Shown here: positions 54,570 to 64,000 of the stretch, piece after piece
Position numbering within the stretch: position 1 is the stretch's first letter
Layout: the number at the start of each line of letters is the position of its first letter
NCBI RefSeq assembly: GCF_021869535.1
Contig: NW_026262668.1
Span: forward strand, 124,001-188,000
DNA: 64,000 nt
Source of the DNA: Mytilus californianus
Taxonomy: Eukaryota
Reading direction: 5' to 3'
Position numbers and translations under genes: made by a program
The notes under the pieces: model-generated
What the model was told of the DNA's origin: nothing
Database searches by the model: none
What the model saw: only the letters and a program-made list of their open reading frames with translations

Positions 54570-55644
54570 TAGAAACACCTAACTATTTAAAACAAATTTT
54601 GGTTTTGAAAAATATCTAACATTGATCAAGAATTTTGAACTTAGAAGAAGTTTTACTAAATTACGTGTATCTTCTCATAGATTACAAATAGAATTAGGTA
54701 GATATCAGGGTATTCCCCGAATTAACAGAATATGTAATAAATGTTCTTCCAATACTGTCGAAGATGAGGCTCATTTTCTATTTGATTGTAACAAATTTGA
54801 GGATGATAGAAATTGTATGTTAGCTAGTATTGCACAATATAATTCTTATTTTAATCATATGAACAGTCAAAGCAAAATTATCTGGTTATTTAGTGTAGAA
54901 AATGTTGAGTTACTTAAAATAATATGTAATTTTATATACAAACATCTTCCTTAGTGAAGATTAGTTAAAGGAAATCTATGTGTGTATATACATTTGATTG
55001 GACATAGAAAATTATATTCATCTGAATATCACAAACATACTAGCCGATTAAAAAAAAAATAATTGTTAAGATATATTATTTATTCAAATGTTCTCTTATA
55101 TCCTTGAGGCGTCGTCCCCTGGTATCAACTGCATTCAAGTTACCTATGATGCTTCCTTGTTTGCTTTTGATACAGGTAGGAAAGAGACATTTACACACAT
55201 TTTACATGCCTATGGCCCATAAGGTATCGCCCCCTGGTGTCAGCTGCCTTTAGGAAACCATAATGCTTTCCTATTTGCTGCTGACACAGGATGAGTCATG
55301 GACATGTTTAATTTCTACTTTCTTTTTGGCTAATTATTATATATTTAATTGATCCAACTTTTTGTGTACTATACATATGTGGATATCTATTTTTCTTTTT
55401 TTCTTTTTGGGCTGCTTGTTTGTTATCTATATCAACCACACTTGCAATAAAATGCATTAGTATTAAAAAAAACAACATACTATAGATTCTTTATCTACGT
55501 ATTCTTTAAGAACTTAAATAGTTCTCGTTTAACTTTTTTTTTTATCTCATTGTTTGTATTGTATTATGAAAAAATTATTGATGTTGTAATGTTTATGCCC
55601 TTTGGGGCCCATAATTGGAAATAAAATATCTTATCTTATCTTAT
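54570..55644 (+). mobile_element. 5'-truncated non-LTR retrotransposon (ORF2 C-terminus plus 3' UTR, possibly RTEX-like)
   Basis: LFKTNFGFEKYL…TKLRVSSHRLQIELGRY…RICNKC…EDEAHFLFDC Cys/His domain. 3' hairpin GCCC-TTTG-GGGC, AATAAA at 55620 and (ATCTT)3 tail. Clade assignment is from memory. Confidence 0.8.
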
Positions 55645-57563: not shown

Positions 57564-58520
57564 AATAGAGGTCGGTCAATTTAAAACGTATCATGTAAAT
57601 CGTATCGATACGTATCTTGGGACATACTAAATATATATGTCGTACTATCCTTGAGTGAAATATCGTTGAATATGCGCTTAGTTACGAGGTTCGTGGCACA
57701 ATGTGTGTAACACATATAATTGGCCATAATTGTCAAAAGTTAATTACCGAGGTATATCGCGTCTGGAACATAATCGAATCGAGTGCACCTTATTTTGAGC
57801 CACACAGAATGTAGTAGAAGTTTGTCATTAAAACTTAAGATTTTCAAATGGTACGTTTCTAAATATAAGGTAATGCAAAATTAAGAAATGAAGTAAACTC
57901 AGCTCCTTAATGGTAACGGTAAAAATCATAAAACAGGCATGAAATAACAAAAATGGGGAGACAAGTGTGACAGGCCATCGCAAATAGTAGGCGTTGTAAG
58001 TGATTGATTTGGTCCCCAATTATATCAAGTCCATTATGTCAAAACAAAAAGTACTTCAAGTTAATGAATAAAGGTGTGAGAAAGTAAAATAGTATACATT
58101 TATTTCCCGTGTCGGAGGGAGATATGAAGATTTGTTCAATGACATGTGGGATAGTCTCAACCAATCACATATTGATTAAACTATCAATATGTTTAAACAG
58201 TGGAAAAAAACGATTTGTTGAACTTTGCTTTTGAAACGCAATCATCGGGCTAGGCATGCATAGGATGCCTTTATTTCTTCGTTGCATTTCGTAATTTGTA
58301 CGGTCTTCGTGCCATTTCCCCATATCTGCCAATCTAGTAAAACTGTATAATTGTTTAAGCTATAGGATTCCATGAAATGAAGAGGATAAAAAGTTTTGAT
58401 ACGCAATATAGACTTGGAACTCGGGATCAAATATTGTGTTTTCTTCAGTATATCTCCAGATACGTTAACGTCAACGTATCTGATACGAGTGGATACGTTT
58501 TAAATTGGCCGACCTCTATT
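57564..58520. mobile_element. non-autonomous TIR element, hAT-like
   Basis: About 28-bp TIR AATAGAGGTCGG(T/C)CAATTTAAAACGTATC at both ends, with clusters of subterminal CGTATC/GATACG motifs. No TSD recovered. Confidence 0.7.
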
Positions 58521-59249: not shown

Positions 59250-59492
59250 ATCATGGAAAAGAGGATAACACGCAGAATTACAAGTTCAAGGACACAAAAT
59301 CATTTCGATAATCATTGTGAATTCAGCTAAAGTAAAATTAACCAATGAAATCGTTGTAATCATGAGACAACTACGAGGGTCATTTAATGCTCACCGCGGA
59401 AAAATATTTAGTTGAAAGGAAGATTTTAGATAGACAAGCTGTGTAATTGTTTTGATGCGGATATTTTAAATTTCATATTATTTATTTTAAAG
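59250..59492 (+). other. GLUL: probable non-coding first exon of glutamine synthetase (5' boundary approximate)
   Basis: Strong donor at 59493 and acceptor tttcAG at 60244, 17 nt before the ATG. Confidence 0.55.
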
Positions 59493-59766
59493 GTAAGGAT
59501 TTTAATTTCTCCTTTATATATAGAATCAATTAGTATTTACTATTTTGACCACATTTAGAGTAGCCATTTAAAAATCAACACTATATTGTTGTAAAATTAT
59601 AGGAATTTTTGTGAAAAATAATGAAGATATGTACAACCAAGGTGTGCCGATTGTTTTTCTTACAACTTTTATATATTTTTGCTCATTTACTATTTTCCAC
59701 AGAAATAATTAGATAAAAATAAATGAAATCAGCTGATTTGCGCATGTTAGTCCAAAGAGTAGTCGG

Positions 59767-59836
59767 TGATGCAATCGTGACCGCAAAACAGCTGATCGGG
59801 GTCATTAAGTAGGAAACCCCCATGTAGTGATGCAAT
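59767..59836 (+). promoter_or_regulatory. two C/EBP-ATF composite (AARE/CARE) sites in GS intron 1
   Basis: TGATGCAAT at 59767-59775 and 59828-59836, each within GTGATGCAATC. E-box CAGCTG lies between them. Confidence 0.55.
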
Positions 59837-60261
59837 CACGATCGAAACCAACAAAGAAATCAGAAATTTGTTATTTTGAACAAATAAACTGTATTTTTTC
59901 TACATGTGTGTCAGAATAATTCAATCACATTAAATGGACATTCTTGATCAACAGACTTAATATCTTGTTTTTGTTAAGCACTGTTGCAAGTCCAGTATAA
60001 CATCACATATGAAAGTTTTTGGGTAATATCTATCGGTTCTCGAGACAATATTCAGTTTTTCAGATTTCTGGGAAAATCGTGGTACTGGTCAAGACCGTAA
60101 TTTTTTTGGCCTAACCTAGCCCAATTGTAAGAGTCTATACCTTTAAACAAAGCGGTCTCCAATACATGTACTTATATTTTTATAAAGAAGTAATGTTTTG
60201 AACTTTTTAACATGTGATGATCCGATCATTTATTTTTCTTTCAGGAAATTAAATCTCTAAA

Positions 60262-60418
60262 ATGACTCAAGTTCATGTGAGTAAAGAGATTTTGGGTCGG
60301 TATATGGATTTGGAGGAGAGGGGAAGAGTCATGTGCGAATATCTATGGATAGATGGCACTGGTGAAGGAATTAGAAGTAAATGTCGTACCATGGAATTTG
60401 AACCGAAGGAACCCAAAG
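60262..60418 (+). CDS. GLUL: glutamine synthetase type II, coding exon 1
   Basis: MCEYLWIDGTGEGIRSKCRT motif, in-frame TAA at 60250 upstream of ATG, donor GTaaaa. Confidence 0.96.
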
Positions 60419-61336: not shown

Positions 61337-61498
61337 AATGTCCCATGTGGAACTATGATGGTTCAAGTACTTACCAAGCTGAAGGCTCAAATTCAGACAT
61401 GTACCTAAACCCTGTGGCAATTTTCAAAGATCCTTTTAGAAGGGGACCACACAAATTAGTTTTGTGCGATGTACTCAAGTATAACAAAAAACCTGCAG
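61337..61498 (+). CDS. GLUL: glutamine synthetase coding exon 2
   Basis: [20 protein letters not shown]…DPFRRG. 162 nt, phase 1-1. Confidence 0.97.
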
Positions 61499-62374: not shown

Positions 62375-62521
62375 AAAGTAACAAAAGAAATACCTGTGCT
62401 ATGGTTATGGAACAAGCCAAAGATACGCATCCATGGTTTGGTATTGAGCAAGAATATACATTATTAGATGTTGACGGACATCCATATGGCTGGCCTAAAA
62501 ATGGATTTCCTGGTCCACAAG
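62375..62521 (+). CDS. GLUL: glutamine synthetase coding exon 3
   Basis: [12 protein letters not shown]…[11 protein letters not shown]. 147 nt, phase 1-1. Confidence 0.97.
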
Positions 62522-63071: not shown

Positions 63072-63399
63072 GTCCTTACTACTGTGGTGTTGGTGCCAAT
63101 AAAGTGTATGGTCGTGACGTTGTTGAGGCACATTACAGAGCCTGTCTTTATGCTGGCGTAAAGATAGCAGGATGTAATGCTGAAGTCATGCCGGCCCAGT
63201 GGGAGTTCCAGGTCGGACCATGTGAGGGCATTGATATGGGAGACCATTTGTGGGTAGCAAGATATTTGTTGCACCGTGTGGCTGAAGAATTTGGTGTTGT
63301 TGTCACTTTAGACCCAAAACCAATTGAAGGAGACTGGAATGGTGCTGGTGCTCATTGTAATTACAGTACTCAAGCAATGAGAGATCCTGATGGAATTAA
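63072..63399 (+). CDS. GLUL: glutamine synthetase coding exon 4
   Basis: GPYYCGVG…[18 protein letters not shown]…[20 protein letters not shown]. 328 nt, phase 1-2. Confidence 0.97.
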
Positions 63400-63789: not shown

Positions 63790-64000
63790 GACCATTGAGG
63801 ATGCAATTGAACGTCTTTCTAAACATCATGTACGTCACATTAAAGCTTATGACCCTAAAGAAGGCAAAGATAATGAACGCCGTCTGACAGGTTTCCACGA
63901 AACCTCGAGTATACATGACTTTTCTGCTGGTGTAGCAAATCGGGGTGCAAGTATAAGAATTCCACGTCAAGTAGCGGAGGAAGGATGTGGATATTTGGAA
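63790..64000 (+). CDS. GLUL: glutamine synthetase coding exon 5 (truncated by window edge)
   Basis: [31 protein letters not shown]…GYLE. Confidence 0.97.

What the first reader, a model, noticed from the sequence alone, without database searches (positions are those of the whole stretch)
59767..59836. Two exact ATF4-C/EBP amino-acid response elements in intron 1 of glutamine synthetase
Seen: GTGATGCAATC twice, 61 bp apart, in a locally CpG-rich patch with CAGCTG E-boxes (~59733, ~59789) and a GGGTCA half-site. I found no other exact TGATGCAAT in the window by eye. Rough expectation at ~30% GC is ~0.01 hits per 752-bp intron, so two is unlikely by chance, although weak flank similarity suggests an old short duplication. 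Established: TGATGCAAT (ATTGCATCA) is the CHOP-type AARE bound by ATF4-C/EBP, and the mammalian SNAT2 AARE is also in intron 1. Inference: this mollusc GS is a direct target of the GCN2/PERK-ATF4 integrated stress response, relevant to ammonia handling and free-amino-acid osmoregulation. I am not aware of this being described.
Basis: partly seen in the sequence, partly recalled or inferred. Interest (0 to 1): 0.7.

Follow-up and report, generated by a model that had tools for sequence, protein, structure and literature searches.

The report
Conserved stress-type enhancer in mussel GS intron
Two identical 11-base sites of the kind bound by the stress factor ATF4 with C/EBP sit in the first intron of a mussel glutamine synthetase gene, in a small switch-like module kept in related species while the surrounding intron has diverged beyond recognition; its function has not been tested.

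Summary
GTGATGCAATC occurs at 59766-59776 and 59827-59837, and these are the only TGATGCAAT in the 64 kb. The E-boxes, the GGGTCA and the CpG-rich patch are also as described.

The window-wide count is not unusual (1.3 expected). The evidence comes from relatives. I fetched glutamine synthetase (GS) loci of other species through the exon-2 peptide. Four-fold sites are about 57% different, and the introns do not align by blastn. In three other species the same grammar still sits in intron 1: TGATGCAA, exactly 12 bp, then AACAGCTGAT. Motif columns are 26/26 identical against 23% in the spacers. Among all 8-mers of the window's intron, ATCAGCTG and TGATGCAA are the two most over-represented in the orthologous intron.

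CARE1 is ancestral. CARE2 looks like a lineage-specific copy that replaced a decayed ancestral second site.

TGAT|GCAA is the best-bound 8-mer of mouse CEBPB|ATF4. Binding by ATF4 and stress induction of GS are plausible but untested.

Verdict: a real, conserved intronic cis-regulatory module and a new member of the CARE enhancer kind.

The parts
59342..59346 (+). CCAAT box of the putative GS promoter
   Evidence: Aligned with CCAAT in L003 and L007 and present in the same arrangement in L052.
59378..59409 (+). Conserved promoter / 5' leader block (GGTCAT ... ACCGCGGAAAAATATT)
   Evidence: It matches L003 at about 24 of 31 positions (local alignment z = 3.4). The same elements are in L052, where the GGTCAT element is inverted: L003 CGTGGTCATGTG is the reverse complement of L052 CACATGACCACG.
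59410..59492 (+). Putative non-coding exon 1. The start is uncertain. It ends at the donor AAG|GTAAGG.
   Evidence: The donor TTTAAG|GTAAG is conserved in L003 and L007, and L052 has AAG|GTAAGT.
59493..60244 (+). Intron 1 (752 bp, GT..AG)
   Evidence: The acceptor, followed by a roughly 17-nt leader before the ATG, is conserved in L002, L003 and L007.
59726..59745 (.). E-box 1 inside a perfect 14-bp palindrome (AAATCAGCTGATTT), abutted by the C/EBP-like TTGCGCAT (59738-59745)
   Evidence: ATCAGCTG is the most over-represented shared 8-mer between the window's intron and the L003 intron.
59766..59776 (+). CARE1, GTGATGCAATC (core TGATGCAA 59767-59774). This is the ancestral site.
   Evidence: The 8-mer lies at offset -21 from the E-box in the window, L003, L007 and L052; in L052 it is inverted.
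59786..59796 (.). E-box 2, AAACAGCTGAT, 12 bp after the CARE1 core
   Evidence: Identical 11-mer in L003. AACAGCTGATC is in L052. L007 has AACAACTGAT.
59798..59806 (+). GGGGTCATT, the GGGTCA half-site-like element
   Evidence: GGGTCATGA follows the E-box in L052, and AGGTCATGA follows it in module 2 of L003 and L007.
59808..59825 (+). AGTAGGAAACCCCCATGT, the probable decayed orthologue of the second CARE of species A/B (TGATGCAACCCCCTTGT)
   Evidence: It lies 11 nt after the E-box, as in L003, and 12 of 17 positions match, including the C5 run. This is an inference from a short alignment.
59827..59837 (+). CARE2, GTGATGCAATC. Probably a lineage-specific copy of CARE1 with its flanks.
   Evidence: It is 81% identical to CARE1 over 21 nt (D3). 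No site lies at this position in L003, L007 or L052.
60245..60418 (+). GS exon 2 (ATG at 60262; 52 codons plus 1 nt)
61337..61498 (+). GS exon 3
   Evidence: Pfam Gln-synt_N. Borders were set from GT-AG and reading phase.
62375..62521 (+). GS exon 4
63072..63399 (+). GS exon 5
   Evidence: Pfam Gln-synt_C. Borders.
63790..64000 (+). GS exon 6, which runs off the end of the window

Best explanation
The two 11-mers belong to a conserved DNA-level cis-regulatory module (enhancer) in intron 1 of a type II glutamine synthetase gene, about 275-345 bp after the exon-1 donor. Its core is a C/EBP-ATF composite site (TGATGCAA), followed after exactly 12 bp by the E-box AACAGCTGAT and then by GGGTCAT. 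In the mussel lineage a second composite site follows. The most likely mechanism is this: a bZIP heterodimer of the ATF4-C/EBP type binds the composite sites, helped by an unidentified factor that binds the CAGCTG box about one helical turn away. GS transcription from the upstream promoter then rises when ATF4 accumulates after eIF2-alpha phosphorylation (amino-acid shortage, ER stress and the like). Shown here: the sequence, its position, the fixed spacing, and its retention across lineages with saturated neutral divergence. Inferred: which proteins bind, and that the output is stress induction. My sub-confidences are 0.85 that it is a functional conserved DNA element, 0.6 that a C/EBP-ATF-class bZIP dimer binds it, and 0.4 that it confers ATF4/ISR inducibility.
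For: The motifs are exact and unique in the window. Orthologous loci were fetched without regard to the motif, through the exon-2 peptide. Between the window and L003, four-fold sites differ by 57% and only exons align by blastn. Even so, TGATGCAA-N12-AACAGCTGAT is present in intron 1 of L003, L007 (E-box CAACTG) and L052, whose exon 2 is only 57% identical and whose CARE is inverted at the same offset. Motif columns are 26/26 identical against 18/78 in spacers and flanks (Fisher P = 5e-13). The chance of the composite appearing in the L052 intron is about 1e-7. Of 710 distinct 8-mers in the window's intron, ATCAGCTG and TGATGCAA are the two most over-represented in the L003 intron (P = 7e-6 and 2e-5). 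L003 and L007 each hold 4 TGATGCAA in intron 1, against 0.14 and 0.13 expected. The window seems to have replaced a decayed second site with a new copy, as expected under stabilising selection on site number. CpG is retained locally. An inverted CARE at a preserved position argues for recognition of double-stranded DNA by a dimer, not an RNA signal. TGAT|GCAA is the best-bound 8-mer of CEBPB|ATF4 and the top motif in CEBPB peaks after ATF4 induction (PMC3668366). Functional CAREs lie in intron 1 of SARS and SNAT2. A cluster of ATF4 sites in the first intron of Drosophila Thor is functional (PMC5223598).
Against: There is no expression, binding or chromatin data. Most of the other distant loci show no such module within the flank available: L008 at 70% exon-2 identity, and L009, L010, L012 and L013 at 54-62%; L053 is uninformative, with only about 400 bp upstream. 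It is therefore not universal. L003 and L007 are close to each other (7% at four-fold sites), so the independent lineages number about three. In the papers I could search, GS is not reported as an ATF4 target with a CARE. Vertebrate binding specificity is being transferred to mollusc proteins. The identity of the organisms behind the metagenome contigs is unknown.
Confidence: 0.5

Rival explanations
1. The module is a real conserved enhancer, but the composite sites are used by other bZIP dimers (C/EBP homodimers, C/EBP-gamma with partners other than ATF4, ATF2/ATF3-type, or a fly-Xrp1-like factor). Together with the E-box and GGGTCAT factors these give constitutive, tissue-specific, immune or hypoxia-linked GS expression, not an integrated-stress-response output.
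For: The conservation evidence is the same as for the main explanation. The conserved unit always includes an E-box and often GGGTCAT, which looks like a tissue-type enhancer grammar. TTGCGCAT, a 7/8 match to the C/EBP palindrome core, abuts E-box 1. GS is not among the ATF4 targets named in the papers read. In Drosophila more than one bZIP pairs with the C/EBP-gamma homologue (PMC13585082 abstract).
Against: TGATGCAA is the heterodimer optimum, not the C/EBP homodimer optimum; in the array data, adding ATF4 lowers binding to TTGC|GCAA sevenfold. The exact 8-mer is kept in four species and in paralogous copies.
Confidence: 0.3
2. There is no function. One CARE-like word arose by chance in an AT-rich intron and was doubled by a short local duplication.
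For: The window-wide count is ordinary. The two copies share flanks. Tandem Repeats Finder sees no array.
Against: The same word at the same 12-bp distance from the same E-box is in intron 1 of three other species across saturated divergence. It was recovered without prior choice as a top shared 8-mer.
Confidence: 0.04
3. The patch is part of a dispersed repeat or transposon remnant, and the repeated motifs are its subterminal repeats.
For: A 15-nt inverted repeat flanks CARE1 in the window (I4). In species A/B the module is repeated three times in tandem 330-430-bp units. SINE-like pieces lie elsewhere in those introns.
Against: There is no second copy in the 64-kb window or in the other fetched loci outside GS intron 1. 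A strict pattern scan of the JGI metagenome contigs gave 0 hits, and the loose pattern gave 36 unrelated, largely microbial-looking chance hits. The inverted repeat is not conserved in L003. Independent insertion into the same intron in several lineages is very unlikely. The whole genome could not be searched.
Confidence: 0.04
4. The module acts as an alternative intronic promoter or at the RNA level (a splicing signal or a structured or small RNA).
For: In mammals intronic CAREs recruit Pol II and TBP (PMC5175342). TATA-like words follow the modules in species A/B. The RNA fold is slightly better than shuffles (z = -1.9).
Against: In the SARS case the mRNA still starts at the canonical start site. 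TATA-like words are common at 32% GC. There is no Rfam match. The spacers are unconserved, and the CARE is inverted in L052, which an RNA signal would not tolerate.
Confidence: 0.05

Closest known systems
Mammalian C/EBP-ATF response elements (CARE/AARE) in first introns: SNAT2 (+709..+717) and SARS (about 1 kb downstream of the start site)
   Same: The word is the same (SARS CARE is TGATGCAAT; consensus TGATGxAAx). The placement is the same: intron 1, a few hundred bp downstream of the start. The expected logic is also the same, with ATF4 recruited on amino-acid limitation (PMC5175342; PMC2553592).
   Different: The gene (GS) and the phylum differ. Here the CARE is tied to an E-box at a fixed 12-bp distance and is duplicated. 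Binding and inducibility are untested here.
CEBPB|ATF4 heterodimer specificity (protein-binding arrays and ChIP-seq, mouse)
   Same: The invariant 8-mer of the mussel module, TGATGCAA, is the best-bound 8-mer of the heterodimer and the top motif in CEBPB peaks after ATF4 induction (PMC3668366).
   Different: The proteins are vertebrate. The specificity of the mollusc orthologues is assumed from the general conservation of bZIP basic regions (my knowledge, not tested here).
Drosophila Thor (4E-BP) first-intron ATF4 enhancer
   Same: It is an invertebrate gene with a cluster of predicted ATF4 sites in the first intron. Reporter activity depends on those sites and on ATF4 (PMC5223598).
   Different: The gene is different, the fly site sequences were not compared here, and no partner E-box is described.
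Tilapia glutamine synthetase intron-1 enhancer (OSRE1)
   Same: The gene is the same and the intron is the same. It is a stress-responsive enhancer needed for induction (PMC7374092).
   Different: The motif is different (OSRE1, NFAT5/TonE-like, DDKGGAAWWDWWYNNRB) and so is the stimulus (hyperosmolality). I saw no homology to the mussel module.
Asparagine synthetase nutrient-sensing response unit (NSRE-1 plus NSRE-2, 11 bp apart) and yeast Gcn4 control of GLN1
   Same: From my own knowledge, not checked here: in the first, a CARE works with a second element about one helical turn away; in the second, glutamine synthetase is under the ATF4 counterpart Gcn4 in yeast.
   Different: The second element here is an E-box, not NSRE-2. 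The yeast review I opened names Gln3 as the main GLN1 regulator (PMC4238866).

Membership tests
CARE / AARE (C/EBP-ATF response element) | Sequence fits TGATGxAAx | tested here: met
   TGATGCAAT occurs twice. The consensus is as given in PMC5175342.
CARE / AARE (C/EBP-ATF response element) | Core equals the preferred word of the C/EBP|ATF4 heterodimer | tested here: met
   TGAT|GCAA is the best-bound 8-mer (PMC3668366). It is the invariant core in the window, L003, L007 and L052.
CARE / AARE (C/EBP-ATF response element) | ATF4 (with a C/EBP partner) occupies the site in cells | not testable with these tools
   No ChIP or EMSA data were available.
CARE / AARE (C/EBP-ATF response element) | The gene is induced by amino-acid limitation or ER stress, and induction needs the element | not testable with these tools
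No paper was found on mussel GS and ATF4.
CARE / AARE (C/EBP-ATF response element) | Enhancer behaviour: works in either orientation and at a distance from the promoter | tested here: inconclusive
   This is a sequence-level hint only. The CARE is inverted in L052 and in module 3 of L003 and L007, and the module lies 94 to about 1060 bp after the donor in different species.
Conserved non-coding regulatory element (phylogenetic footprint) | Motif retained at the orthologous place while neutral sequence has diverged | tested here: met
Dispersed repeat / transposon remnant | Further copies elsewhere in the genome | tested here: not met
   None were found in the window, the other loci or the JGI metagenome contigs. 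The whole mussel genome was not searchable.
Type II glutamine synthetase gene | Gln-synt_N and Gln-synt_C domains in the downstream exons | tested here: met
   Pfam PF03951 and PF00120 score above their cut-offs.
Intron 1 location | Transcript evidence for a non-coding exon 1 spliced to the exon holding the ATG | not testable with these tools
   The support is indirect: a conserved donor AAG|GTAAG, a conserved acceptor plus 17-nt leader, and a conserved CCAAT/GGTCAT/GCGGAAAA promoter block.

The most novel reading that the evidence does not exclude
Mussels, and at least one more distant relative, wire glutamine synthetase directly into the eIF2-alpha-kinase/ATF4 stress pathway through an old intron-1 enhancer with a fixed grammar (CARE, 12 bp, E-box, GGGTCAT). 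Site number has been maintained by turnover. The module is tripled in relatives whose contigs come from hydrothermal-vent metagenomes. This would make ammonia assimilation and glutamine supply an ISR output in molluscs. That link is not part of the canonical mammalian ATF4 regulon, but it recalls Gcn4 control of GLN1 in yeast.
Probability: 0.3. Interest if true: 0.65.

Novelty: new member of a known kind. Interest (0 to 1): 0.5.

Why it matters
If the module is what it looks like, it gives a concrete, mutable DNA handle on how intertidal and vent mussels couple nitrogen handling (ammonia detoxification, free-amino-acid pools) to the conserved translational stress pathway. It would also be one of very few candidate ATF4/C-EBP enhancers defined outside vertebrates and flies. 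The fixed CARE/E-box spacing and the apparent replacement of a lost site are a compact natural example of enhancer grammar and binding-site turnover, testable with a reporter of about 130 bp. If ATF4 does not bind, the element is still a deeply conserved GS enhancer whose factors are worth identifying.

Tried and rejected
There is no transcript evidence for exon 1 or for induction.
- Tandem Repeats Finder found no array. The 60-bp 'duplication' is only motif-deep.
- blastn of the upstream region and intron against the orthologous contigs aligned exons only.
- An exact look-up of the window's exon-2 ORF product found nothing.
- A word search with the chance 50-aa ORF that overlaps the module, meant to pull in closer relatives, found nothing.
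- The representative-protein search returned only exon-sized fragments. No full-length GS protein was obtained, so the annotated gene range could not be looked up.
- Metagenome pattern scans gave 0 strict hits and 36 loose hits, all unrelated. This is only a weak test for a dispersed repeat, because host DNA is sparse in that collection.
- A first-order Markov simulation timed out and was replaced by analytic expectations.
- Rfam found nothing, and the RNA fold was unremarkable.
- Literature: I found no paper linking Mytilus, ATF4 and GS, and none among those opened showing a GS CARE in any animal. Yeast Gcn4-GLN1 control could not be confirmed from the papers opened.
- A single TTGCATCA upstream of exon 1 in L003 is mutated in L007, so I did not count it.
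- Single CARE-like words 0.5-2 kb upstream in L008 and L009 are at chance level.

Full report
**1. Observation**

The window reads GTGATGCAATC at 59766-59776 and again at 59827-59837. TGATGCAAT occurs nowhere else in the 64 kb on either strand. CAGCTG is at 59730 and 59789, and GGGTCA is at 59799-59804. The patch holds 7 CpG in 120 bp, which puts it in the top 1.5% of such windows.

Downstream, an ATG at 60262 opens a type II glutamine synthetase (GS). The exon peptides carry Pfam Gln-synt_N and Gln-synt_C. GT-AG borders and reading phase give these exons:
- exon 2: 60245-60418
- exon 3: 61337-61498
- exon 4: 62375-62521
- exon 5: 63072-63399
- exon 6: 63790 to the window end

Exons were searched one at a time by reference.

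**2. Is it more than chance?**

- On the whole window it is not. Shuffles give 1.3 matches, and 40 of 100 shuffles reach two.
- Within the 752-bp interval it is. Two TGATGCAA cores stand against 0.05 expected.
- The two copies share flanks, with 81% identity over 21 nt, so they are not independent events.

**3. Relatives**

- A word search with the 52-aa exon-2 peptide gave fragments 59-96% identical. A representative search gave more distant fragments.
- The contigs that encode them were fetched without reference to the motif.
- L003, L004 and L005 are one species ('A', 90% exon-2 identity). Their record names point to hydrothermal-vent metagenomes.
- L006 and L007 are a close relative ('B', 85%).
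- L001 and L002 (96%) have only about 100 bp upstream.
- L008 (70%) and L009-L015, L052 and L053 (54-63%) are more distant.
- A note by another agent of this scan calls the genome Mytilus californianus (s1-307218). I did not verify this, and the contig organisms are unnamed.

**4. Neutral divergence**

Between the window and species A, four-fold sites differ by 57%, which is close to saturation. Species A and B differ by only 7%. blastn aligns exons only. Outside the module and the promoter, local alignment of the introns scores no better than shuffles (z = -1.2).

**5. The module is retained**

- A MAFFT alignment anchored at exon 1 and direct scans show the same grammar in the window, L003 and L007: TGATGCAA, exactly 12 bp, then AACAGCTGAT (CAACTG in L007).
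- It lies 274 bp after the exon-1 donor in the window and 311 bp after it in L003.
- Motif columns are identical at 26 of 26 positions, against 18 of 78 in spacers and flanks (Fisher P = 5e-13).
- An unprompted test agrees. Of 710 distinct 8-mers in the window's intron, the two most over-represented in the L003 intron are ATCAGCTG (P = 7e-6) and TGATGCAA (P = 2e-5).
- L003 and L007 each carry four TGATGCAA in intron 1, against 0.14 and 0.13 expected. These sit in three tandem units of 330-430 bp. Unit 3 has ATTGCATCAT, then TGATGATGCAAG, again 12 bp before AACAGCTG.

**6. A deeper case**

L052 has an exon-2 peptide only 57% identical to the window's. Starting 94 bp after its exon-1 donor it carries ATTGCATCA; the 8-mer TTGCATCA is followed by 12 bp, then AACAGCTGATC, then AGTC, then GGGTCATGA.
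- The CARE core occupies the same offset (-21) from the E-box as in the window and L003, but it is inverted.
- The chance of this composite in a 688-bp intron is about 1e-7.
- GGGTCAT after the E-box is shared with the window (GGGGTCATT) and with unit 2 of species A/B.
- The core module is therefore older than the mussel lineage sampled.
- It is not universal. L008, L009, L010, L012 and L013 show no such cluster in the flank available, and L053, with only about 400 bp upstream, is uninformative.

**7. Which of the two sites is old?**

CARE1 (59767) is the conserved anchor. In species A/B the second site lies 11 nt after the E-box and reads TGATGCAACCCCCTTGT. At that same distance the window reads AGTAGGAAACCCCCATGT (59808-59825), which matches at 12 of 17 positions including the C run. 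The window's CARE2 follows 2 nt later and resembles CARE1 with its flanks.

The simplest reading is that the ancestral second site decayed and was replaced by a copy of the first. That is what stabilising selection on site number would produce. This step is an inference from short alignments. L052 has no second site.

**8. Is it intron 1?**

There is no RNA evidence. The indirect support is as follows.
- The acceptor and a roughly 17-nt leader before the ATG are conserved in four species, so an upstream non-coding exon exists.
- The donor AAG|GTAAG at 59492|59493 is conserved in L003, L007 and L052.
- Upstream of the donor a promoter-like arrangement is shared: CCAAT, then a GGTCAT element, then GCGGAAAA. 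The L003 12-mer CGTGGTCATGTG is the exact reverse complement of L052 CACATGACCACG.

**9. Not a dispersed repeat, as far as could be tested**

- No second copy is in the window or in the other loci.
- A strict pattern scan of the JGI metagenome contigs found nothing.
- The looser CARE-N12-E-box pattern found 36 unrelated, largely microbial-looking chance matches.
- The whole mussel genome could not be searched.
- Presence in the same intron in several lineages makes repeated insertion implausible.

**10. What binds?**

- TGAT|GCAA is the best-bound 8-mer of the mouse CEBPB|ATF4 heterodimer on arrays. It is also the most enriched motif in CEBPB peaks after ATF4 induction (PMC3668366).
- CAREs are defined as TGATGxAAx. 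Functional CAREs lie in intron 1 of SARS (TGATGCAAT) and SNAT2 (PMC5175342; PMC2553592).
- In Drosophila, a cluster of ATF4 sites in the first intron of Thor drives ATF4-dependent expression (PMC5223598). ATF4 there pairs with a C/EBP-gamma homologue (PMC13585082 abstract).
- Tilapia GS has a different stress enhancer in intron 1 (PMC7374092).
- An ATF4-C/EBP-type dimer is therefore the best candidate. It remains an inference carried over from vertebrate proteins.
- The partner that binds the CAGCTG/CAACTG box, and whatever reads GGGTCAT, are unknown.
- I found no paper describing a CARE in a GS gene, or ATF4 control of GS in a mollusc. The search was limited.

**11. Rivals**

- The strongest rival keeps the enhancer but assigns it to other bZIP dimers and a non-stress output (0.3).
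- Chance plus duplication, a repeat remnant, and an RNA-level or alternative-promoter role are each at or below 0.05. The reasons are in the Rival explanations section. In brief: no Rfam match, fold z = -1.9, unconserved spacers, and an inverted CARE in L052.

**12. Verdict**

- The functional claim is untested.
- This is a new member of a known kind (CARE enhancers), with a fixed-spacing E-box partner that I have not seen described.
- Interest is 0.5.

Noticed in passing
window 59342-59409; L003 about 1494-1562; L052 956-1012: The promoter architecture upstream of exon 1 is conserved: CCAAT, a GGTCAT element, then GCGGAAAA (GCAGGAAAG in L052). The L003 12-mer CGTGGTCATGTG is the exact reverse complement of L052 CACATGACCACG. 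GGGTCATT also recurs inside the intron module.
   Followed up: partly
window 59726-59739 and 59728-59742 / 59782-59796: E-box 1 lies in a perfect 14-bp palindrome (AAATCAGCTGATTT). A 15-nt inverted repeat (14/15 complementary) brackets CARE1. It is not conserved in L003.
   Followed up: partly
L003 1945-2800; L007 830-1640: Intron 1 of species A/B holds three tandem units of 330-430 bp. Each starts AAGTG.AAGTTTGATCA(A/G)CTGAT and carries E-box or CARE motifs. The intron is 1.9-2.0 kb, against 752 bp in the window.
   Followed up: partly
L003 1-180 and 3380-3600; L007 2160-2400: These stretches look like tRNA-derived SINE pieces (GTTCGAATCC-like T-arm, then a shared core ending ...GAAATATTGTTGAA). 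They lie upstream of the GS gene and in intron 1 of species A/B and are absent from the window's intron.
   Followed up: no
window 57564-57613 and 58474-58520: An inverted repeat, 84% complementary over 51 nt and about 900 bp apart, lies upstream of the GS promoter, near CpG-dense patches at about 57560 and 58670. It may mark transposon ends.
   Followed up: no
window 54622-54954: A 110-aa ORF has a retroelement-like cysteine/histidine tail (…CNKCSSNTVEDEAHFLFDC…). It lies beside the LINE 3' region that another first-stage note places at 55101-55310.
   Followed up: no
L001 / L002: The contig pair closest in protein (96% in exon 2, 97% in exon 5) is only about 83% identical in exon DNA. Its introns are much shorter, with exons 2-6 inside 2.9 kb. 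It may be another species or a paralogue. Its upstream sequence is too short to test for the module.
   Followed up: no
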